Shown in pieces: positions 35,350 to 63,241 of a DNA stretch of 64,000 nucleotides (the first letter of the stretch is position 1; each line of letters begins with the position of its first letter). The stretch lies in the IMG/VR virus record IMGVR_UViG_3300018962_000001, positions 140,686-204,685 of that record; one strand, 5' to 3'. A model generated the notes under the pieces. The model saw only the letters and a program-made list of their open reading frames with translations, was not told the origin of the DNA and made no database searches. Both the position numbers and the translations under genes were made by a program.

Positions 35350-35378
35350 TTGACATACGCTGATACATGCGCTAAGCT
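35350..35378 (+). promoter_or_regulatory. SigA-type promoter of the plus-strand accessory block
   Basis: TTGACA-N17-TAAGCT. Confidence 0.7.
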
Positions 35379-56955: not shown

Positions 56956-57200
56956 AGCATCCTCCGCGACATCATCGGAAGCACGACATACACGCCATAG
57001 GCATCGGAGTCGTTCGCAAGCTCCTGCCAACACGCAGCTTCGGTGGGGTGATCCTCGAATCGACCGTAGGGACCGCCATACCCACTTTGCTGCGGCTCCT
57101 TCAGCAACCCTTCCCGGATCTCATAGATCCGGTACCAGACGCGGACGTTGGATGGTGGCCCGGATGGCGATTCGGGCACTGATTCCGGCGGTTGACACAT
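56952..57200 (-). CDS. Hypothetical protein, 82 aa
   Basis: ATGA overlap with the AP2 gene; AAAGGA RBS. Confidence 0.6.
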   Translation of the reverse strand: MCQPPESVPESPSGPPSNVRVWYRIYEIREGLLKEPQQSGYGGPYGRFEDHPTEAACWQELANDSDAYGVYVVLPMMSRRML

Positions 57201-57332
57201 GGGCAAGTAATCCTTTCGTGCCCCTGGCGATACCGTCAAGGGGTCATAAACGATGCGGAAGTTTTAATCCCCCCCCGCGCAGGGCGGCAACGCGATTCAA
57301 GCAAAAACCTTACAAATAACGAGGTTCGGGCC

Positions 57333-57659
57333 TTAGCGTGCCTCCTGCGCCCCCAACAAGGCCATTAACGCAGCCTGGGCGCGCTGACCCCCATCGCCGG
57401 TTGCCAGGTCGGTATGCCCATGCTGATCGTAATAGGCATTAAGGTCCGCGTAGAAGCGTAGGGCGTCGATACACGCGGTGATCGCATCAGAATTGACCTG
57501 AATCAGCACATGGAGGCGGAGACCAATCAGGCGGGCAGCAACCAACTGTGGGAGGACATGCTCCCGCAGGTACACGTCGGTTGCTTCAGTATCCGCGAGC
57601 ACCTGCCGCCGGTGCGATTGGGTGTGCGGATCGATGATGAGGCATTCAATGTCGGCCAT
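57333..57659 (-). CDS. Hypothetical protein, 108 aa
   Basis: GAGGA RBS; paralogue of 55673..56452. Confidence 0.7.
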   Translation of the reverse strand: MADIECLIIDPHTQSHRRQVLADTEATDVYLREHVLPQLVAARLIGLRLHVLIQVNSDAITACIDALRFYADLNAYYDQHGHTDLATGDGGQRAQAALMALLGAQEAR

Positions 57660-57755
57660 CGTGGTCCTCGCGTTCAGGTCGATGCGGGAGGAATTGCTCC
57701 CCCCCGCGCTCAGATCAAACATCCAGCAAGTCAAAAATTCGTATAGTTAGGATAG

Positions 57756-57787
57756 GGGGGGATTCGGGCGCGGTACCCGAATCCCCC
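57756..57787 (-). terminator. Hairpin after 57796..58170
   Basis: GGGGGATTCGGG...CCCGAATCCCCC 12 bp stem. Confidence 0.65.
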
Positions 57788-57795
57788 GATCGATT

Positions 57796-58170
57796 CTAGC
57801 GCGGGCGGAAAAAATCGCCGCGCGCGATCGCGCTATCGATCGGCGCGGCGATCGGATCGTTTAATTCGCCGCGCCCCGATCGGGTATTTTCGTAGGCGGC
57901 GGCGGCGGCGGGTAGCGGGCGGCGATTCGCGCGCGCCCAAATTTTATCCGCGCGATCGATACCGCGATTCGCGGCGGCGTACGCGGCGGAATCGGATAGT
58001 AGATCCGGGCGGGCGTAAAATTCGGCGGCGGCTAGTACGATCGGATCGGGGTAAAAATCGCGGCGATCGATAATTAAGCCGTTAAGCGCGTAGCGTAGAT
58101 AAATTTGGGCGGCGGCGGATTCGATTCGGGCTAGGATCGTAGCGGTAGCGGTAGCGGTAGCGGTAGTCAT
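57796..58170 (-). CDS. Compositionally extreme protein 1, 124 aa
   Basis: Own promoter, GGGGA RBS and terminator. Confidence 0.75.
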   Translation of the reverse strand: MTTATATATATILARIESAAAQIYLRYALNGLIIDRRDFYPDPIVLAAAEFYARPDLLSDSAAYAAANRGIDRADKIWARANRRPLPAAAAAYENTRSGRGELNDPIAAPIDSAIARGDFFRPR

Positions 58171-58221
58171 TTTGGTATCCCCTAGTAGCGGCGCGGCGGG
58201 CGCGATTCATTTGATAGGTAT

Positions 58222-58250
58222 AGTATAGCGTATATCGGCGCGCTAGTCAA
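58222..58250 (-). promoter_or_regulatory. Repeated strong promoter, copy 1
   Basis: TTGACT-AGCGCGCCGATATACGC-TATACT, then TATCAAATGAATCG leader. Confidence 0.85.
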
Positions 58251-58389
58251 TCAAAATCTAGTAAAAATAGCGGCGGATTTTGTATAGATATATTAACTAT
58301 ATCTAGGCGGATCGGGCGCGCTAGGCGGCGCGCTAGGGGCGATAGGGGCGCTATCCGCGCCCCTATACGCGATCGGGGGATACGCGGCG

Positions 58390-59043
58390 CTACGCGGCGC
58401 GGGTAGCCTTAAGGCCCGTCTTAACCGTACCGTGCCCCTTAATTTCTACCGCGATCGGCGTATCGCGTACTACGCGGGCGCGTACCGTATAGCGGATACG
58501 GGTAGCGGTACGATCCGCTACGATCGCCTTAATTTCGCCGTAGATCGCGCCGCCGGTAGCGGCTATATCGCGGATAAAATCGGCGCGGGCGCTATCGATC
58601 GTACTATCGATCGGGCGGCTATAGCGGATAAATTCGGATCGGGCGCATTTCGGTACCGCTACCGGATAGACGCGGGCGCGGCGGGCGCTAGGCGCTACGG
58701 GCGCGGGCGCTACGGGCGCGGGCGCGGTATAGATCCGGGCGCGGCGCGGGCTATCGTAGGCATGCGATAGTAGGCGGGCGATTCGGGCGCGGCGGGCGGA
58801 TTCGTAGCGGGCGGCGGCGCGGCGGGCATTAATTTCTAGCGATTCGCGGGCGTACGTACTAGCCGGATAGGTACCCGCCGAAAATTCGCGCCCGGTACGC
58901 GGATCGGTTAAGTAGGCCGTATTTTCAAATTGGCCGGGATTCGGGCGGCGGCGATCGTAGCGAATCGCGTAGGTAGTACCGTTAATTTCGATCGTAGCGG
59001 CGGCGGCGGATTTTTTGGCGGCGGTAGTAGCGGTAGTAGTCAT
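58390..59043 (-). CDS. Compositionally extreme protein 2, 217 aa
   Basis: Own promoter; GGGGA RBS. Confidence 0.75.
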   Translation of the reverse strand: MTTTATTAAKKSAAAATIEINGTTYAIRYDRRRPNPGQFENTAYLTDPRTGREFSAGTYPASTYARESLEINARRAAARYESARRARIARLLSHAYDSPRRARIYTAPAPVAPAPVAPSARRARVYPVAVPKCARSEFIRYSRPIDSTIDSARADFIRDIAATGGAIYGEIKAIVADRTATRIRYTVRARVVRDTPIAVEIKGHGTVKTGLKATRAA

Positions 59044-59101
59044 TTCCGTATCCCCTAGATACTAGGCCGCTATCGGTAGCGGCGATTCATTTGATAGCGG
59101 T

Positions 59102-59130
59102 AGTATAGCGCGTATCGGCGCGTACGTCAA
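59102..59130 (-). promoter_or_regulatory. Repeated strong promoter, copy 2
   Basis: TTGACG-TACGCGCCGATACGCGC-TATACT, then TATCAAATGAATCG. Confidence 0.85.
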
Positions 59131-59298
59131 GTATAGATTTGGTAAAAATAGGCCGGATTTTGTATAGATTTGGTAAAAATTTTATACGGGTATGGTTGTA
59201 AAAAATCGGTAAAAAAGTACCGGAATCAACCGCCCGGATCGACATAAGGAGGCGCGCATGTGCGCGTGTGTGAGCGTGCGTGTGCGCGCCGATTCGCA

Positions 59299-59480
59299 CG
59301 TACGGCCAACCAGCCATTCTCAACGAAGCGCCTGCGCGTGCGCGTTGATACCCGCGTGCGGCCAACCAGCGATTCCCAACAAACCGCCTGCACGCATCCA
59401 TGAATACCCGCGTACGGCCAACCATGCAGTTCCGAGAATGTCCCTGCGCCCCTGTGTTGATGCCCGCGTGCGGCCAACCA
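59299..59480 (+). repeat. Four copies of CGTRCGGCCAACCA at exact 56 bp spacing
   Basis: Copies start at 59299, 59355, 59411 and 59467. Confidence 0.85.
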
Positions 59481-59487
59481 TCTATGG

Positions 59488-59775
59488 TCAGGGGAGCGGA
59501 TCAGGATCATGCCAGCCATGCGGGCTATCCGCATAACAACCACGAAACACCAACGAGTCCCCAAGCACCGACGCTTCCGCATCGGTTCGGCGCGTCTTGA
59601 TACGCCAACCCAACCGCCGACAAACGGCGACCATCTGCTCGAACTGGTCGGGCGCGGCCTGGATCGCCAGGCCGCCGGGCACGATGTCGGAGGAAATGCC
59701 AACCTCGGCCAAGGCCGCTTGCGCAGCACACGCCTGCTGATAGGTGCGCGGTTGAATGGTGTACTCTTTGGTCAT
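59488..59775 (-). CDS. Hypothetical protein, 95 aa
   Basis: GAGGAG RBS. Confidence 0.65.
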   Translation of the reverse strand: MTKEYTIQPRTYQQACAAQAALAEVGISSDIVPGGLAIQAAPDQFEQMVAVCRRLGWRIKTRRTDAEASVLGDSLVFRGCYADSPHGWHDPDPLP

Positions 59776-59846
59776 GGTCTAACTCCTCGGCAGAATCCCT
59801 GCCCGATGCGAGGGCCGGTCGTTGTGATCGGCCCTCGGTACCCGAC

Positions 59847-60089
59847 CTACCAATCGTAGTCAGCAGCAATCGACACGAAGCTGGACGAGCCGACCGCGAA
59901 TGCGTGATCCTCAACACGGGAATCGGCATCGGTCGCAGCCTCGATCATGGTTGACAGCACCCAGCACTCGGCAGGATCGGTCGTTTCCGCGTGGGCGGCG
60001 GCGGCGGCGTCGAGCACTTCTTGCCGGGCGGCAGGACTCAACTTGGCGGCAAGGGCAAGCAAGGCAACATATTCGGTTGATGACCTCAT
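59847..60089 (-). CDS. Hypothetical acidic protein, 80 aa
   Basis: CGAAAGGAACCCGCC-ATG leader; promoter TTGACA-N17-TAAGCT at 60167-60139. Confidence 0.7.
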   Translation of the reverse strand: MRSSTEYVALLALAAKLSPAARQEVLDAAAAAHAETTDPAECWVLSTMIEAATDADSRVEDHAFAVGSSSFVSIAADYDW

Positions 60090-60196
60090 GGCGGGTTCCT
60101 TTCGTGCTCGGCGCTGGGCCGGTATCTATCGTGCTTGGAGCTTACCGCTGGTCGGCCAGTATGTCAAGGGGTTACAAGAACGACCTGCCGAACGCT

Positions 60197-60481
60197 TTAC
60201 GAATCCGCCAGGGCGCGCGGAGCGAGGTGGTTGGCGACATCGCGCGATTGCTCGGCCAGCTGCCGCAGCGTGTCGGCCAGCGGGCCAGCCGCAGGGGTGA
60301 TTCGGGCCAGGGCCGCAGCCTCGGCGGCCAACCGCAGGACATCTGCCGCAATGCAGGTTGCGAGGGTGGCGGCAACCTGCGCCTCGTGCTCGGCATTGGT
60401 ATGCTGCGCGCCGATCCGGCAAAACGCGCATGGTTGGGGGAGATTTGGTGACACGACCTGATTCCTTTCGTATGCAAGCAT
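60197..60481 (-). CDS. Hypothetical protein with CAFC motif, 94 aa
   Basis: Follows the 37 aa peptide gene; start uncertain. Confidence 0.5.
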   Translation of the reverse strand: MLAYERNQVVSPNLPQPCAFCRIGAQHTNAEHEAQVAATLATCIAADVLRLAAEAAALARITPAAGPLADTLRQLAEQSRDVANHLAPRALADS

Positions 60482-60493
60482 GGTTGGAGAGGG

Positions 60494-60607
60494 CTATGCC
60501 CCCTCCTCCTCGTCCTCGTCCCGGTTGTCCTGGTCGGCGGCGGCATCTTCGCGTTCGAGTCGCGCTACGGCTTCCTCGGCTTCTCGGTCGGCCCAATCGC
60601 GGTACAT
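60494..60607 (-). CDS. 37 aa highly acidic peptide (not in ORF track)
   Basis: MYRDWADREAEEAVARLEREDAAADQDNRDEDEEEGA; same CGAAAGGAACCCGCC-ATG leader as 59847..60089; promoter TTGACG-N17-TATGAT at 60673-60645. Confidence 0.7.
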   Translation of the reverse strand: MYRDWADREAEEAVARLEREDAAADQDNRDEDEEEGA

Positions 60608-60677
60608 GGCGGGTTCCTTTCGCTCCATCGTCGTATCTGAGCACATCATACCGGAGGTCGATCGGAACGTCAAGGGG

Positions 60678-61001
60678 TTATGATACGACCTTTGATCGAC
60701 CCGATTCCCTGGGGGTCCGGGCGAGCCGCGCCCTGGCGTCGGCGATTAAGGCGACCAGATCGGCAGGCTTGCGCCGTGGGGGGAGCGACTGCTCTAGGGC
60801 AACCACGGCGGCCTCAACCCCTTGGGCGGCGCGTTCTCGCGCCTCGCAGGTTTGCCGGGAGGGCATCCATACCTGGCCGAATCCATAGGCGGGCATAGGC
60901 CGCTTCGACCGATCAACGGCTCGGTTGGCCTCCTGCAAGGTTTGGAGCGCTGCGCGAAGACAGTCGGCGCGATACGCACGGGTGGTTGCTCGATGGCCCA
61001 T
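60678..61001 (-). CDS. Hypothetical protein, 107 aa
   Basis: AAAGGAGG RBS. Confidence 0.7.
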   Translation of the reverse strand: MGHRATTRAYRADCLRAALQTLQEANRAVDRSKRPMPAYGFGQVWMPSRQTCEARERAAQGVEAAVVALEQSLPPRRKPADLVALIADARARLARTPRESGRSKVVS

Positions 61002-61028
61002 GACGGCCTCCTTTCGGTTGCAGGTTGC

Positions 61029-61054
61029 CGCCGGGCGGATTAATCCGCCCGGCG
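61029..61054. terminator. Perfect 26 bp palindrome after 61065..61520
   Basis: CGCCGGGCGGATTAATCCGCCCGGCG. Confidence 0.7.
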
Positions 61055-61064
61055 ATTCGCGGAT

Positions 61065-61520
61065 CTAGCGGGTTGATTTTTCCCCGTAGCGCGGGTCGAG
61101 TCGCGGTAGCGCGTTAAGCGCGGCGGCTAGGGCCGAATCGTAGATCGCGGCTACGGCGGCGGCGTACCGATCGAGTCGATCCGAATCGTAGGCCGCGCCC
61201 GATTCGAGGTCGGCGGCGATCGCGGCGGCGGATTCCGATTCGTAGCCGCCGCCTAGCGCGGCAAAAATCGATTCGGCGGCGGCGGCGGCGGTCGATAGGA
61301 TATACAAATCGCTATAGGATTCGAGTCCGGCGGCGGCTAGGATTTCGCCAAATCCTACGGCGCTATCCCCCCCGATATACCCGGCGCGATTCCCCGCTAC
61401 GATTCCGGCGGAAATCCCGGCGGCGGCGGCGGCGATTAATTCGACCGAATCTAGGGGATAGACGGCTAGGGCGGCGGCGGCGGCGGCGGCGGATTTTGGG
61501 GCGATTTGGATCGGGTTCAT
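61065..61520 (-). CDS. Compositionally extreme Ala-rich acidic protein 3, 151 aa
   Basis: Own promoter and terminator. Confidence 0.75.
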   Translation of the reverse strand: MNPIQIAPKSAAAAAAALAVYPLDSVELIAAAAAGISAGIVAGNRAGYIGGDSAVGFGEILAAAGLESYSDLYILSTAAAAAESIFAALGGGYESESAAAIAADLESGAAYDSDRLDRYAAAVAAIYDSALAAALNALPRLDPRYGEKSTR

Positions 61521-61572
61521 TAATTTTTCCCTACTAGCCCGTATCGCTACGGGCGATTAATTTGATAGCCGT

Positions 61573-61601
61573 AGTATAGCGCAAAAATACGCGCTAGTCA
61601 A
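61573..61601 (-). promoter_or_regulatory. Repeated strong promoter, copy 3
   Basis: TTGACT-N17-TATACT, then TATCAAATTAATCG. Confidence 0.85.
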
Positions 61602-61722
61602 GGGAGGTTGACGGGGAAAAAGAAGGTCGATCCGACGAATCGCACCGGGCCGGGTTGGATCGGCGCTGCGCAGCGGCGGTAGGTTGGCGGGCGGGTTGGC
61701 ATTACCCAACCCGCCCGGCGAT

Positions 61723-62163
61723 CTAGGGATTAAGCAGGTTGGTTACGATTCCCCCCGGATCGGTACGGTAAAATGCGATCAACTTCCCCCCGGAAATGCA
61801 ACCTTCGAAGGTCGGGCCGAGGGCCGCGTCTAGGTACGTATCCAAATCGGGAATCGCGGCGGCGGATTCGGCGCGCGGGCAACCTTCGGCTACCCATTTA
61901 ACGTAGCCCGCCGCGATTCCAACATGGGCGGCGGCGATTCCGCGCGCGATCCGGGGCGGATCAACCGGAATCCCGTAGGCGGCAAATCCGGCGGCGGCGA
62001 TCGGCGGCGCGGCGATCGGCGGCGCGGGCGCGGCGGGCGGCGCGGGCGGATAGGGATACGTTAAGCGATCGTAGGTATAGGCGGCGGCGGATTCGCGGAT
62101 CATTTCAAATTCGGCGGCGTAGGATTCGGGCGAATTGTTGGAATCGTAGACTCGGATAGGCAT
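61723..62163 (-). CDS. Compositionally biased protein 4, 146 aa
   Basis: Own promoter; GGGAG RBS; hairpin 61689-61716 downstream. Confidence 0.75.
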   Translation of the reverse strand: MPIRVYDSNNSPESYAAEFEMIRESAAAYTYDRLTYPYPPAPPAAPAPPIAAPPIAAAGFAAYGIPVDPPRIARGIAAAHVGIAAGYVKWVAEGCPRAESAAAIPDLDTYLDAALGPTFEGCISGGKLIAFYRTDPGGIVTNLLNP

Positions 62164-62217
62164 TTTCGGACTCCCGTAGCGGTAGCGGCGCGTAGGCCGG
62201 ATTTATTTGATACCGCT

Positions 62218-62246
62218 ATATTACCGCGTATCGGCGCGCTAGTCAA
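62218..62246 (-). promoter_or_regulatory. Repeated strong promoter, copy 4
   Basis: TTGACT-AGCGCGCCGATACGCGG-TAATAT, then TATCAAATAAATC. Confidence 0.8.
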
Positions 62247-62559
62247 GGGTAACCTTCGCCCGATCGCGCAGGTCGATCCGCCGATCGCACCCGGCGTACT
62301 GCTGAAGGTCGGGCTTGACAACCAGGCCCGTGGGCAGCGATGCTGCTGGCAGGGGCCACGCCAGGGGCCAGCAGCACGCTGAGCTGCGTCCACCTTCTGA
62401 CCTGCACCCACCTGGACAGGTGGACTTGTACGTACGGCCAACCATTCAAACCCAGCGATGCGCAGCTTGGCGCGTACGGCCAACCATCCAAACCCAGGGA
62501 TGGCCCGACCTTGCAGCGATCCGGTTTCACTGAACCTGCGCCAGCGTCCACGGTCACGC

Positions 62560-62588
62560 TTGACGACCGCACCGCATAGCGCTATGCT
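62560..62588 (+). promoter_or_regulatory. SigA-type promoter
   Basis: TTGACG-N17-TATGCT. Confidence 0.7.
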
Positions 62589-62625
62589 GCCCCTATCGAA
62601 TGACGAGTCTACGAGGAGGATGTCC

Positions 62626-62859
62626 ATGATCGTCTGTGTGCCGGTATCACCCGCCGAAGAAGCCCGCATTGCCGCGCTGAACCTGCCGGATCGGGTCTGG
62701 CGTATCCGTCTTGACCCGCACGAAGAACGCGAGATCGCCGCTCCGCTGGTCGAGCTGGCGCAGCATCGGTACCTCCAAGCCTTAGACCTGGACCGGGATG
62801 CTCGTGCCTGGGACCGGGTGCAGGCGATCCCAGGCACCGACCCCCATCCGCAGCGATAG
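62626..62859 (+). CDS. Hypothetical protein, 77 aa
   Basis: GAGGAGG RBS after the promoter. Confidence 0.7.
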   Translation: MIVCVPVSPAEEARIAALNLPDRVWRIRLDPHEEREIAAPLVELAQHRYLQALDLDRDARAWDRVQAIPGTDPHPQR

Positions 62860-62950
62860 CCCTCCAGGTCCACCTGCGCAGACAGAGCGATGTGCGCGTA
62901 CGGCCCACCACGTGTGCGCACCGATTCGCAGGTCCGGCCCACCATCGGGT

Positions 62951-63241
62951 TTATGCCGCACGGCGCTCCACAATCGACTCCCCGACGACCCAGTTCATCG
63001 CCACCGCCACATGTGCCGCCATCGCGACCGGATCGTGCCCGTCGCAGGTCGCGATGGCAAGAATATAGCTCCAAACGAGGACTGCATCTCCCGCGCATGC
63101 CCATCCCGACACGTGCAGCCCTTGCCCGGCGAGCCGCCGGGCAAGGTGTTCTCCTTGATCGACCGTCAACCGAACGCGATCGACGGTGTACACGACTCGG
63201 ATCGGCGCTAGGGGATCGTTCCCCGGTTGATCATCGGTCAT
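62951..63241 (-). CDS. Hypothetical protein, 96 aa
   Basis: GGAGG RBS; overlap with the upstream stop. Confidence 0.6.
   Translation of the reverse strand: MTDDQPGNDPLAPIRVVYTVDRVRLTVDQGEHLARRLAGQGLHVSGWACAGDAVLVWSYILAIATCDGHDPVAMAAHVAVAMNWVVGESIVERRAA

What the first reader, a model, noticed from the sequence alone, without database searches (positions are those of the whole stretch)
57756..62246. Four single-gene cassettes with a shared promoter and a conserved TATCAAAT(G/T/A)AATC leader
Seen: each biased gene has TTGAC(T/G)-N17-TA(T/A)(A/T)(C/A)T with a similar GCGCG-rich spacer, the same 13 nt element at the predicted start site, and a downstream hairpin. Related promoters occur at 35350, 39452, 42073, 60139, 60645 and 62560. 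Inference: an immediate-early host-takeover or anti-defence module with a shared operator or RNA leader.
Basis: partly seen in the sequence, partly recalled or inferred. Interest (0 to 1): 0.6.

Follow-up and report, generated by a model that had tools for sequence, protein, structure and literature searches.

The report
Four CA/TG-free phage early genes
Four small genes of a roughly 220-kb soil-crust phage use the phage's ordinary early promoter, but each whole unit, from promoter to stop codon, has been rewritten to lack the dinucleotides CA and TG, a local recoding I could not find described anywhere.

Summary
Four minus-strand single-gene units each carry TTGAC(T/G)-N17-TA(T/A)(A/T)(C/A)T, then 5 nt, then TATCAAATNAATC, an ORF and a strong GC hairpin (0 expected by chance).

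The promoter is not module-specific. The phage (204.7-kb contig, extended here to 216.6 kb; biocrust metagenome; 39 tRNAs) has 72 promoters of one grammar, including the "GCGCG-rich" spacer. Seven normal units also have ATC(A/G)AA exactly 7 nt after the -10. The four form a tight subfamily of this class (65-81% identity outside the hexamers, against 37±9%).

What sets them apart is composition.
- They are the only places in the genome with CA+TG near 2% (genome 12.7±2%) and CG+TA at 22-27%.
- The bias is strand-symmetric and acts across codon boundaries (15 junctions against 92±6).
- It is also imposed on the spacer, -10, start-site motif and Shine-Dalgarno, and it bends amino-acid composition.
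- It starts near the -35 and stops at the stop codon or hairpin.
- One gene (g2) is a recoded paralogue of a normal early gene.
- The whole genome lacks 15 hexamer palindromes, and so do the cassettes.

Best reading: these are standard host-polymerase early units secondarily stripped of short DNA target words. The reason is inferred, not shown. The proteins are orphans.

The parts
62218..62246 (-). Cassette 4 promoter: TTGACT, 17-nt spacer, TAATAT
62200..62212 (-). Cassette 4 start-site/leader element TATCAAATAAATC. The predicted +1 is the A that lies 7 nt after the -10.
61723..62163 (-). g4, 146-aa acidic orphan protein (P0004)
61688..61717 (-). 12-bp GC hairpin directly after the g4 stop codon. 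It has normal composition and no U tract.
61573..61601 (-). Cassette 3 promoter: TTGACT, 17-nt spacer, TATACT
61555..61567 (-). Cassette 3 leader element TATCAAATTAATC
61537..61554 (-). 7-bp hairpin in the 5'UTR. On the + strand, this hairpin plus the leader complement scores as a terminator.
61065..61520 (-). g3, 151-aa acidic, Ala-rich orphan (P0003), predicted all-helical at low confidence
61029..61054 (-). 11-bp GC hairpin after g3. The next gene (60678-61001) starts just beyond it.
59131..59225 (-). AT-rich region upstream of cassette 2 with two copies of a ~20-nt repeat. It is shared in part with cassette 1 and is already CA/TG-poor.
59102..59130 (-). Cassette 2 promoter: TTGACG, 17-nt spacer, TATACT
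59084..59096 (-). Cassette 2 leader element TATCAAATGAATC
59066..59083 (-). 7-bp hairpin in the 5'UTR
58390..59043 (-). g2, 217-aa basic protein (P0002). It is a recoded paralogue of the normal-composition early gene P0005 of the same phage (L139:3951-4442).
58342..58366 (-). 10-bp GC hairpin after g2
58222..58250 (-). Cassette 1 promoter: TTGACT, 17-nt spacer, TATACT
58204..58216 (-). Cassette 1 leader element TATCAAATGAATC
57796..58170 (-). g1, 124-aa orphan protein (P0001)
57757..57787 (-). 13-bp GC hairpin after g1. The composition bias ends here.

Best explanation
The four units are ordinary members of this phage's class of early, host-RNA-polymerase-driven, single-gene transcription units. 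The standard layout is -35 TTGACN, a 17-nt spacer, -10 TAnnnT, start at an A 7 nt downstream within ATC(A/G)AA, a UTR of about 50 nt that often holds a hairpin, a Shine-Dalgarno, a small ORF and a GC hairpin.

The four have been rewritten, unit by unit, in a restricted DNA vocabulary.
- CA/TG is almost banned, and only CAA/TTG is tolerated.
- A followed by C or G is allowed only after T.
- Every signal was translated into that vocabulary with its function kept: TGCGC became ACGC in the spacer, TAAGCT became TATACT, ATCGAAAC became ATCAAAT, and GAAAGGA became TAGGGGA.
- The proteins' amino-acid make-up was bent to fit.

The conserved 13-mer is therefore the recoded version of the common start-site/initial-transcribed element. 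It is not a private operator.

Inferred, not shown: the recoding is selected target avoidance. The phage already purges restriction sites to an extreme degree. These four units have in addition been cleared of most short mixed words that a DNA-reading enzyme (restriction, modification or another defence) could recognise. The promoter-to-stop segment would then stay intact or unmodified and keep being transcribed whatever happens to the rest of the DNA. That is what one would want for first-line counter-defence genes.
For: Shown:
- There are 4 exact promoter-plus-leader copies against 0 expected.
- The genome holds 59-72 promoters with a shared spacer consensus.
- The same grammar precedes tRNA genes in bacterial MAGs, so it is a housekeeping-sigma promoter type.
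- ATC(A/G)AA sits exactly 7 nt after the -10 in 11 units, 7 of them of normal composition.
- 17 of 19 normal units of the arm have GAAAGG-type Shine-Dalgarno sequences where the cassettes have TAGGGGA, TAGGGA or CGGGAG.
- The cassettes are the only CA/TG-poor stretches in 216 kb, at 0.02-0.04 against 0.127±0.020. Nothing comparable turned up in 1.16 Mb of unrelated loci.
- CAG/CTG and CAC/GTG occur once each in 2,482 nt, and the depletion is symmetric on both strands.
- The avoidance works across codon junctions: 15 observed against 92±6.3, minimum 70 in 2,000 synonymous shuffles.
- The ORFs are intact despite abundant out-of-frame TAG/TAA.
- g2 is a full-length paralogue of a normal early gene (E 5e-14). 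Of 27 CA/TG-containing codons in the paralogue that align to g2, only 1 survives.
- The bias switches on within about 40-80 nt of the -35 and off at the stop codon or hairpin.

Context for the inference:
- 15 hexamer palindromes are completely absent from the genome where 10-200 are expected. CYCGRG, GRGCYC and CTCTTC are near zero.
- The cassettes also have none of these palindromes, although about 33 are expected from their own dinucleotide content. They hold 25 CTAG but none of the four NCTAGN palindromes.
- The same selective regime therefore acts inside the cassettes.
Against: - There are no expression data of any kind. All holders are DNA contigs.
- No relatives carry the early arm, so there is no comparative test.
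- A DNA-cutting enemy should select genome-wide, because one cut kills. The local pattern needs the extra assumption that an intact expression unit has value in itself.
- The cassettes keep many 4-bp palindromes (GATC 40, CGCG 77, GCGC 63, CTAG 25). They are enriched in CTAG and AATT, which the rest of the genome under-uses.
- The proteins are orphans that fold at pLDDT 42-43, so nothing ties them to counter-defence.
- Other early units with the same promoter are not recoded.
Confidence: 0.5

Rival explanations
1. Import. The four units are moron-like imports, by recombination at conserved promoter and terminator sequences, from an unsampled relative. That relative's whole genome would be CA/TG-free, for example because of a different host defence or a DNA hypermodification. 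The local pattern would then need no local advantage.
For: - The bias coincides with promoter-to-terminator units.
- The four promoter-plus-leader segments are 65-81% identical to each other and stand apart from the 68 others.
- Pairs 1/2 and 3/4 share extra upstream flank.
- The early arm is a mosaic of paralogues.
- The cassettes obey the same palindrome taboo, as a donor on the same host would.
Against: - No such donor or any homologue exists among 5.8 billion and 1.84 billion searched proteins, apart from the in-genome paralogue.
- No genome with this composition is known to me.
- The units use this phage's own promoter grammar and UTR layout.
- It only moves the question of why CA/TG is avoided to the donor.
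Confidence: 0.22
2. This is a dedicated immediate-early regulon. The 13-mer and/or the shared spacer core (CGCGCCGATAC in three of four) is an operator or RNA leader bound by a specific regulator that co-controls just these four genes.
For: - The four are much more alike than other promoters, including at spacer positions that are otherwise unconserved.
- The 13-mer is invariant at 12 of 13 positions.
- The phage encodes several HTH proteins and a sigma70-region-4 protein.
Against: - The core ATC(A/G)AA at the same offset occurs in 7 normal units, and the full 13-mer in one.
- The 13-mer is not palindromic.
- The 5'UTR hairpin is present in only 2 of 4.
- There is no Rfam match.
- Similarity can be explained by common descent plus the restricted vocabulary.
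- It does not explain the composition.
Confidence: 0.15
3. A context-dependent mutational process (RIP-like deamination or targeted hypermutation) acted on these units, filtered by purifying selection.
For: - TpA is up and CpA/TpG are down, as in RIP.
- Total pyrimidine-purine steps are conserved (0.258 against 0.276), as expected if CA/TG changed by transitions.
Against: - GC content is unchanged (0.60-0.63 against 0.61) and CpG is enriched 1.8-fold. Both C-to-T and A-to-G changes at the same dinucleotide would therefore be needed.
- Gln, Trp, His, Met and Cys codons are purged rather than retained. C-to-T at CAR or G-to-A at TGG gives stops and would leave those residues in place.
- The ORFs are intact.
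- No reverse transcriptase or deaminase appeared in the Pfam census.
Confidence: 0.08
4. Artefact: an assembly chimera or synthetic spike-in DNA.
For: The composition looks designed, like CpG/UpA-maximised synthetic recoding.
Against: - The same sequence is embedded in the same flanks in three assemblies (JGI, Logan, ENA).
- An identical low-coverage piece spans the cassette 4 boundary in a second sample.
- The units use the phage's own promoter grammar and obey its palindrome taboo. One is a paralogue of a neighbouring gene.
Confidence: 0.02

Closest known systems
Phage 'morons' (autonomous promoter-gene-terminator units of lambdoid phages such as HK97; from my own knowledge of the Hendrix/Juhala definition)
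   Same: A single gene sits between its own sigma70-type promoter and a hairpin, with a nucleotide composition unlike its neighbours.
   Different: Here nearly every gene of the arm is such a unit. The four use the phage's own promoter grammar, and one is a paralogue of a resident gene. The compositional difference is a dinucleotide rule at unchanged GC, not a GC shift. Presence/absence among relatives could not be tested.
Strong early promoters of T5 (N25 family) and T7 (A1-A3), which have conserved initial transcribed regions and lie ahead of anti-restriction genes such as T7 0.3/ocr (own knowledge)
   Same: Near-consensus hexamers with a 17-nt spacer, a conserved A/T-rich sequence from +1 onward, AT-rich upstream DNA in two of four, and small early genes.
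   Different: No sequence relationship. Timing and strength are untested. These examples have no whole-unit dinucleotide recoding that I know of.
Restriction-site (palindrome) avoidance in phage genomes
   Same: The genome lacks 15 hexamer palindromes outright, and the cassettes share this. The CA/TG rule behaves like avoidance: it is strand-symmetric, ignores reading frame, and extends to non-coding signals.
   Different: Classical avoidance removes specific 4-6-bp words genome-wide. Here whole dinucleotide and trinucleotide classes are removed, and only in four transcription units.
Synthetic CpG/UpA-enriched recoding of viral genes (for example PMC10191365, seen)
   Same: The end state is similar: CpG and TpA raised, with protein coding kept.
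   Different: That recoding is man-made, synonymous-only and meant to attenuate. This one is natural, also changes the amino acids and the regulatory signals, and is defined by loss of CA/TG.
Repeat-induced point mutation (fungal RIP)
   Same: High TpA and low CpA/TpG.
   Different: GC is not lowered, CpG is enriched, there are no stop codons, and the organism is a phage. The membership test failed (see Membership tests).

Membership tests
Housekeeping (sigma70/sigmaA-type) bacterial promoter | A -35 hexamer close to TTGACA and a -10 hexamer TAnnnT, separated by 17±1 nt | tested here: met
   The hexamers are TTGACT or TTGACG, the spacer is 17 nt, and the -10 is TATACT or TAATAT, scoring 9-10 of 12.
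Housekeeping (sigma70/sigmaA-type) bacterial promoter | The same grammar is used by bona fide cellular promoters | tested here: met
   CCCTTGAC-N4-GC-N7-TGCGC-TAnnnT is found in 66 bacterial contigs, several directly ahead of tRNA genes, in Clostridia and Chloroflexota MAGs.
Housekeeping (sigma70/sigmaA-type) bacterial promoter | Transcription actually starts 6-8 nt downstream of the -10 | not testable with these tools
   No RNA runs hold the sequence.
Phage moron | A gene flanked by its own promoter and terminator | tested here: met
   The hairpins lack a U tract.
Phage moron | Composition distinct from the neighbouring genes | tested here: met
   CA+TG is 0.02-0.04 against 0.127±0.020. GC is unchanged.
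Phage moron | An insertion between backbone genes, present or absent among related phages | not testable with these tools
   No relatives carry this arm.
Integron gene cassette | A promoterless ORF with an attC site, next to an intI integrase | tested here: not met
   Each unit has its own promoter. The hairpins are simple GC stems. No integrase family appeared in the Pfam census of 210 ORFs.
RIP-like C-to-T hypermutation | TpA up and CpA/TpG down, together with falling GC, no CpG gain and nonsense mutations | tested here: not met
   GC is 0.60-0.63 against 0.61. CpG rho is 1.84. There are no in-frame stops.
Diversity-generating retroelement target | A reverse transcriptase gene and a template repeat nearly identical to the variable region | tested here: not met
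   No RT family appeared in the census. tblastn found no second copy of any cassette gene in the genome.
Known RNA leader or riboswitch families (Rfam) | A match to a curated covariance model | tested here: not met
   No matches at E<=1 over 57000-63000.
Restriction-site avoidance | Specific short palindromes absent far beyond expectation | tested here: met
   15 hexamers have 0 copies against 10-200 expected genome-wide. In the cassettes the count is 0 against about 33 expected.
Restriction-site avoidance | The avoided words are targets of enzymes present in the host | not testable with these tools
   The host is unknown.

The most novel reading that the evidence does not exclude
These are 'stealth' expression units, a counter-defence strategy working at the level of DNA vocabulary. 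A phage that cannot clear a 220-kb genome of every short or variable target word clears four promoter-to-stop units of whole dinucleotide and trinucleotide classes. These first-line genes then stay uncut, unmodified and transcribable, and can still deliver their (anti-defence) products while the rest of the DNA is under attack. This would be gene-scale restriction avoidance strong enough to reshape promoter, ribosome-binding site and protein sequence.
Probability: 0.3. Interest if true: 0.85.

Novelty: new variant of a known kind. Interest (0 to 1): 0.62.

Why it matters
The promoter finding by itself is routine. It does give a clean 72-member promoter set and a start-site motif for an uncultured, tRNA-rich jumbo phage.

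The recoding is the interesting part.
- It is a natural case where selection (or an unknown process) on DNA words overrides codon choice, regulatory consensus and amino-acid composition, and does so within sharply bounded transcription units.
- A normal paralogue in the same genome serves as an internal control.
- If it is target avoidance, it defines which short words the enemy reads, and it points to four orphan proteins as prime candidates for new anti-defence functions.
- If it is import, it predicts a phage lineage with a very unusual genome-wide DNA composition or chemistry.
- Either way it is directly testable with synthetic de-recoded genes.

Tried and rejected
Searches for relatives:
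- blastn of the locus against 50,697 phage records gave no match.
- Promoter-plus-leader patterns in IMG/VR and JGI/ENA metagenomes gave only AT-rich chance hits or an unrelated conserved bacterial promoter. None had CA/TG depletion.
- A recoded Shine-Dalgarno-plus-start pattern hit an unrelated phage group.
- A neighbouring 259-aa protein had no relatives.
- The terminase had one 17-kb fragment at 46% identity.
- DnaB had at most 34% identity to isolates.
- P0005 had no match in phages.

Protein function:
- Pfam and PHROGs found nothing.
- Word searches for P0001, P0002 and P0004 found only the query itself.
- The ESM Atlas gave no usable hit.
- AlphaFold single-sequence models of P0004 and P0003 had pLDDT 42-43, too poor for fold search.
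- The four proteins are not paralogues of each other. Only g2 has an in-genome paralogue.

Expression:
- No RNA run holds the sequence. Read laying (5,901 letters) showed only the source contig and identical fragments in a second sample.

Ideas rejected:
- Codon or tRNA-level bias: the avoidance crosses codon junctions and covers non-coding DNA, even though the phage has Leu-TAG, Leu-TAA and Val-TAC tRNAs.
- mRNA-level avoidance of one RNase motif: CA and UG are both depleted on the mRNA strand, and the untranscribed promoter is recoded too.
- Unusually structured mRNA: MFE per nt is ordinary.
- An upstream ORF from the ATG in the leader: the ATG is absent in cassettes 3 and 4.
- An IHF or DnaA box, or a palindromic operator, in the 13-mer: no adequate match by inspection.
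- Cyanobacterial HIP1 enrichment: absent.
- CcrM-type GANTC regulation: only 2.4-fold enrichment, and the site is in only 2 of 4 leaders.
- The specificity of the phage's N6/N4 methyltransferases could not be inferred.
- The full ENA record could not be searched.

Full report
**Where the window lies.** The window is the last 64 kb of a single 204,685-bp contig, 60.8% GC. It is the JGI biocrust metagenome contig Ga0193589_1000010, which IMG/VR holds as a linear virus record. A Logan contig and a 224,726-bp ENA contig from the same sample carry the same sequence and run past the window's end. I joined the extra 12 kb (L139) to give a 216,640-bp working genome.

It is a phage.
- It has a terminase, DnaB, RNase H, and a 2,576-aa protein with M23 and SLT domains.
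- It has three N6/N4 DNA methyltransferase matches, one of them below the family's score cut-off, a CCA-adding enzyme, an RNA ligase and a sigma70-region-4 protein.
- No RNA polymerase or reverse transcriptase was found.
- It has 39 tRNA genes.
- It has no close relative among isolates or IMG/VR.

The composite pattern (-35, spacer, -10, 4-6 nt, TATCAAAT) occurs four times, all on the minus strand, against 0 in shuffles. It occurs nowhere else in the genome. An independent consensus scan lists the same four at 9-10 of 12. Each is followed by an ORF of 124, 217, 151 or 146 aa. These ORFs are open although TAA/TAG are abundant in the other frames (3-13 per frame), so they are real coding frames. 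Each ORF is followed by a 10-13-bp GC hairpin without a U tract.

**The promoter is the phage's general promoter.**
- TTGAC-N17-19-TAnnnT occurs 59 times in the contig against 3-9 in Markov controls. It occurs 72 times with the 17-nt spacer in the extended genome.
- The 68 non-cassette copies give the consensus CCCC-TTGACa-t.cGC.c.....TGCGC-TAagcT. The 'GCGCG-rich spacer' is therefore a genome-wide feature.
- The promoters face rightwards over 0-128 kb and 159-183 kb, and leftwards over 198-217 kb. The structural block has almost none.
- The same grammar, searched in 185,579 species genomes, hits 66 contigs. Several hits lie directly in front of tRNA genes, in Clostridia and Chloroflexota MAGs. 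It is thus a housekeeping-sigma promoter type read by host polymerase. That fits an early or middle class, but timing is inferred only.

**The leader is a dialect of the common early leader.**
- In the leftward arm almost every small gene is its own unit. The layout is promoter, 6 nt, ATCGAAAC-like start region, a short GC hairpin, GAAAGGA, then ATG. 17 of 19 normal units have this type of Shine-Dalgarno.
- ATC(A/G)AA sits exactly 7 nt after the -10 in 11 units. These are the four cassettes and seven normal ones. One normal unit has the full TATCAAATCAATC, and the divergent promoter at 62560 has TATCGAATGAC.
- The four cassettes nevertheless form a tight subfamily. They are 65-81% identical outside the hexamers, against 37±9% for other pairs (99th percentile 59%).
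- Cassettes 1 and 2 share about 40 nt of further AT-rich upstream sequence. Cassettes 3 and 4 share a block of about 25 nt of normal composition.
- The 5'UTR hairpin is clear in only two of four. There is no Rfam match.

**What really distinguishes the four units is composition.**
- Sliding windows show them as the only places in the genome where CA+TG falls to 0.02-0.04. The genome value is 0.127±0.020 in 300-nt windows. CG+TA rises to 0.22-0.27 from 0.135, at unchanged GC.
- Odds ratios in the cassettes against the genome are CA/TG 0.19 (1.07), TA 2.15 (0.66), CG 1.84 (1.14) and AT 2.08 (1.51).
- At the trinucleotide level, CAG/CTG and CAC/GTG occur once each in 2,482 nt. GAG/CTC, ACA/TGT, CCA/TGG and GCA/TGC are 7-10-fold down. 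CTA/TAG is 5.5-fold up and GTA/TAC 3.3-fold up. Counts are symmetric between strands.
- The residual CA/TG are almost all CAA/TTG, start codons, or the TTGAC and TCAAAT signals.
- The rule seems to be: no CA/TG, and A may be followed by C or G only after T. AAAG, GAGC, GAGA and CGACG are absent, and GAAC and AAAC occur once each, against 8-20 expected.
- The avoidance is not a codon effect. At codon junctions there are 15 CA/TG against 92±6.3 in synonymous shuffles (minimum 70).
- It extends to untranslated and untranscribed DNA. In the spacer the consensus TGCGC is ACGC or ACGCG in three of four. The -10 is TATACT or TAATAT rather than the arm's usual TAAGCT. The Shine-Dalgarno is TAGGGGA, TAGGGA or CGGGAG rather than GAAAGGA.
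- It reaches the proteins. Gln, His, Met, Trp and Cys are nearly absent. Ala (23%), Arg, Ile and Tyr are inflated. Leu is CTA, Val is GTA and Glu is GAA.
- Total pyrimidine-purine steps are conserved (0.258 against 0.276). That fits CA/TG having been replaced by transitions to CG or TA.
- The switch is sharp. Forbidden words fall from about 7-13 per 40 nt to 0-4 at, or 40-80 nt before, the -35. They jump back to 10-12 right after the hairpin of g1 and g3. In cassette 4 they rise again towards the stop.
- The mRNAs are C-rich (GC skew -0.12 to -0.20, against +0.02±0.09) but not unusually structured.

**An internal control.** A full HMMER search of 1.84 billion representatives found one relative of g2's product. 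This is P0005, encoded 13 kb further along the same arm of the same phage. It has its own standard promoter, an ATCGAAACC leader, a GAAAGGA Shine-Dalgarno and normal composition (CA+TG 0.110). The two align end to end at 30% identity, E 5e-14. Of the 27 CA/TG-containing codons in the paralogue that align to g2, only the His in a conserved KGHG motif keeps CA in g2. The others became synonymous CA/TG-free codons or different residues: Gln to Glu, Thr, Ala or Val; GTG-Val to Arg, Ile, Asp or GTA; Cys to Val or Thr. So at least one cassette is a recoded member of a resident gene family. The arm contains several other paralogue pairs, and one gene with a half-way bias.

**Context: extreme site avoidance.** Outside the cassettes the genome has zero copies of 15 hexamer palindromes. 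Among them are CGGCCG, GCCGGC, GGCGCC, GGATCC, CCCGGG, GGGCCC, CCATGG, TGGCCA, CTCGAG, CTGCAG, GACGTC and GATATC, with 10-200 expected. It is nearly free of ACGCGT, GAGCTC, GTGCAC, CYCGRG, GRGCYC, CTCTTC and CCGACGG. The cassettes obey the same taboo. They have 0 against about 33 expected from their own dinucleotides, and 25 CTAG without a single ACTAGT, CCTAGG, GCTAGC or TCTAGA. They have therefore evolved under the same regime as the rest of the phage, or of a close relative on the same host. They are not stray foreign or synthetic DNA. Three assemblies, and a boundary-spanning piece from a second sample, also argue against an artefact.

**Interpretation.**

*Shown:*
- The four are standard early-type single-gene units of this phage.
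- Their shared leader is the local version of a common start-site element.
- The whole unit has been translated into a CA/TG-free vocabulary that acts at the level of double-stranded DNA.

*Inferred:* this is selected avoidance of short target words, which I rate most likely at roughly 0.3-0.35 for this specific reason. The arguments are:
- it behaves like restriction avoidance, being strand-symmetric, frame-blind and applied to non-coding signals;
- it occurs in a genome where such avoidance is already extreme;
- its extent matches exactly the segment that must stay intact for a functional mRNA.

*The weak point:* a cut elsewhere would still kill the genome. One must therefore assume a value in continued expression from a fragment or from unmodified DNA, for example by helping co-infecting genomes or by winning a race against restriction.

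*Main rival:* import of the units from an unsampled relative whose whole genome has this composition (about 0.2). A private regulon with its own operator (about 0.15), a mutational process (about 0.08) and an artefact (about 0.02) follow. The mutational model is disfavoured. It needs two different transitions at the same dinucleotide, it keeps GC constant, and it cannot explain the purge of Gln and Trp codons, whose C-to-T or G-to-A products are stops.

**Comparison with known systems.** The anatomy is that of phage morons and of strong early promoters with conserved initial transcribed regions, such as T5 N25 and T7 A1-A3 (my own knowledge). Integron cassettes, DGR targets, RIP and known RNA leaders fail their defining tests (see Membership tests). 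I found no description of natural genes lacking CA/TG in three literature searches. The closest look-alike is man-made CpG/UpA recoding of animal viruses. I therefore rate it a new variant of a known kind. The promoter part is ordinary. The recoding is surprising and directly testable.

- Read laying was given 5,901 letters.
- No alternative genetic code was used.

Noticed in passing
whole genome (G000 plus L139), including window 1-64000: Fifteen hexamer palindromes are completely absent where 10-200 are expected: CGGCCG, GCCGGC, GGCGCC, GGATCC, CCCGGG, GGGCCC, CCATGG, TGGCCA, CTCGAG, CTGCAG, GACGTC, GATATC, GCTAGC, CCTAGG and ACTAGT. ACGCGT, GAGCTC, GTGCAC, CYCGRG, GRGCYC, CTCTTC and CCGACGG are near zero. 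This is an unusually thorough restriction-site purge.
   Followed up: yes
G000:C1:99684-129065 (outside the window): The genome has 39 tRNA genes covering nearly all amino acids, including Leu-TAG, Leu-TAA and Val-TAC. A CCA-adding enzyme and an RNA ligase are encoded elsewhere in the genome.
   Followed up: partly
window 35350, 39452, 42073, 60139-60167, 60645-60673, 62560, and 60 or more further sites genome-wide: There are 72 promoters of one grammar: CCCC-TTGACa-N4-GC-N7-TGCGC-TAnnnT. About 7 nt after the -10 there is often TAGCA or ATCGAA. The same grammar precedes tRNA genes in Clostridia and Chloroflexota MAGs, which is a weak hint at the host.
   Followed up: yes
window 59290-59490, 62420-62490, 62895-62950; also G000 923, 1967, 80643 and ext 214838: The motif GCGTACGGCC(A/C)ACCA occurs 12 times, always on the + strand. 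Four copies lie at a 56-bp period just upstream of cassette 2, and pairs lie upstream of the + strand promoter at 62560. This could be iterons or a regulator-binding array. A + strand ORF at 59258-59536 with a strong Shine-Dalgarno overlaps the four-copy array.
   Followed up: partly
L139:3951-4442 (about 13 kb beyond cassette 2 on the same arm, outside the window): This is P0005, the normal-composition paralogue of g2. The arm holds several further paralogue pairs.
   Followed up: yes
L139:2994-3323: This 109-aa early gene has an intermediate bias (CA+TG 0.064, CG+TA 0.213, no CTAG). It has a normal paralogue at L139:9563-9883 and may be a partly recoded unit.
   Followed up: partly
window 59066-59096 and 61537-61567: On the + strand, the 5'UTR hairpin followed by the complement of the leader (GATTCATTTG or GATTAATTTG) scores as an intrinsic terminator. 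It could block antisense read-through into cassettes 2 and 3.
   Followed up: no
window 61628-61665 and 62265-62295: Cassettes 3 and 4 share a block of about 25 nt of normal composition (GGTGCGAT..GGATCGACCT) some 25 nt upstream of their -35. This suggests a tandem duplication of the promoter region, or a shared upstream site.
   Followed up: partly
L140 (JGI Ga0193589_1000271, 11.9 kb): A second contig in the same metagenome carries the distal early arm with small differences (160 against 163 aa, and 103 against 105 aa). It is a co-occurring strain variant. It ends before the cassettes.
   Followed up: no
window 57796-62163, the four ORFs: The cassette mRNAs are markedly C-rich and G-poor: 37% C, GC skew -0.12 to -0.20, against +0.02±0.09 for 44 neighbouring early genes. 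This is the one clear strand asymmetry.
   Followed up: partly
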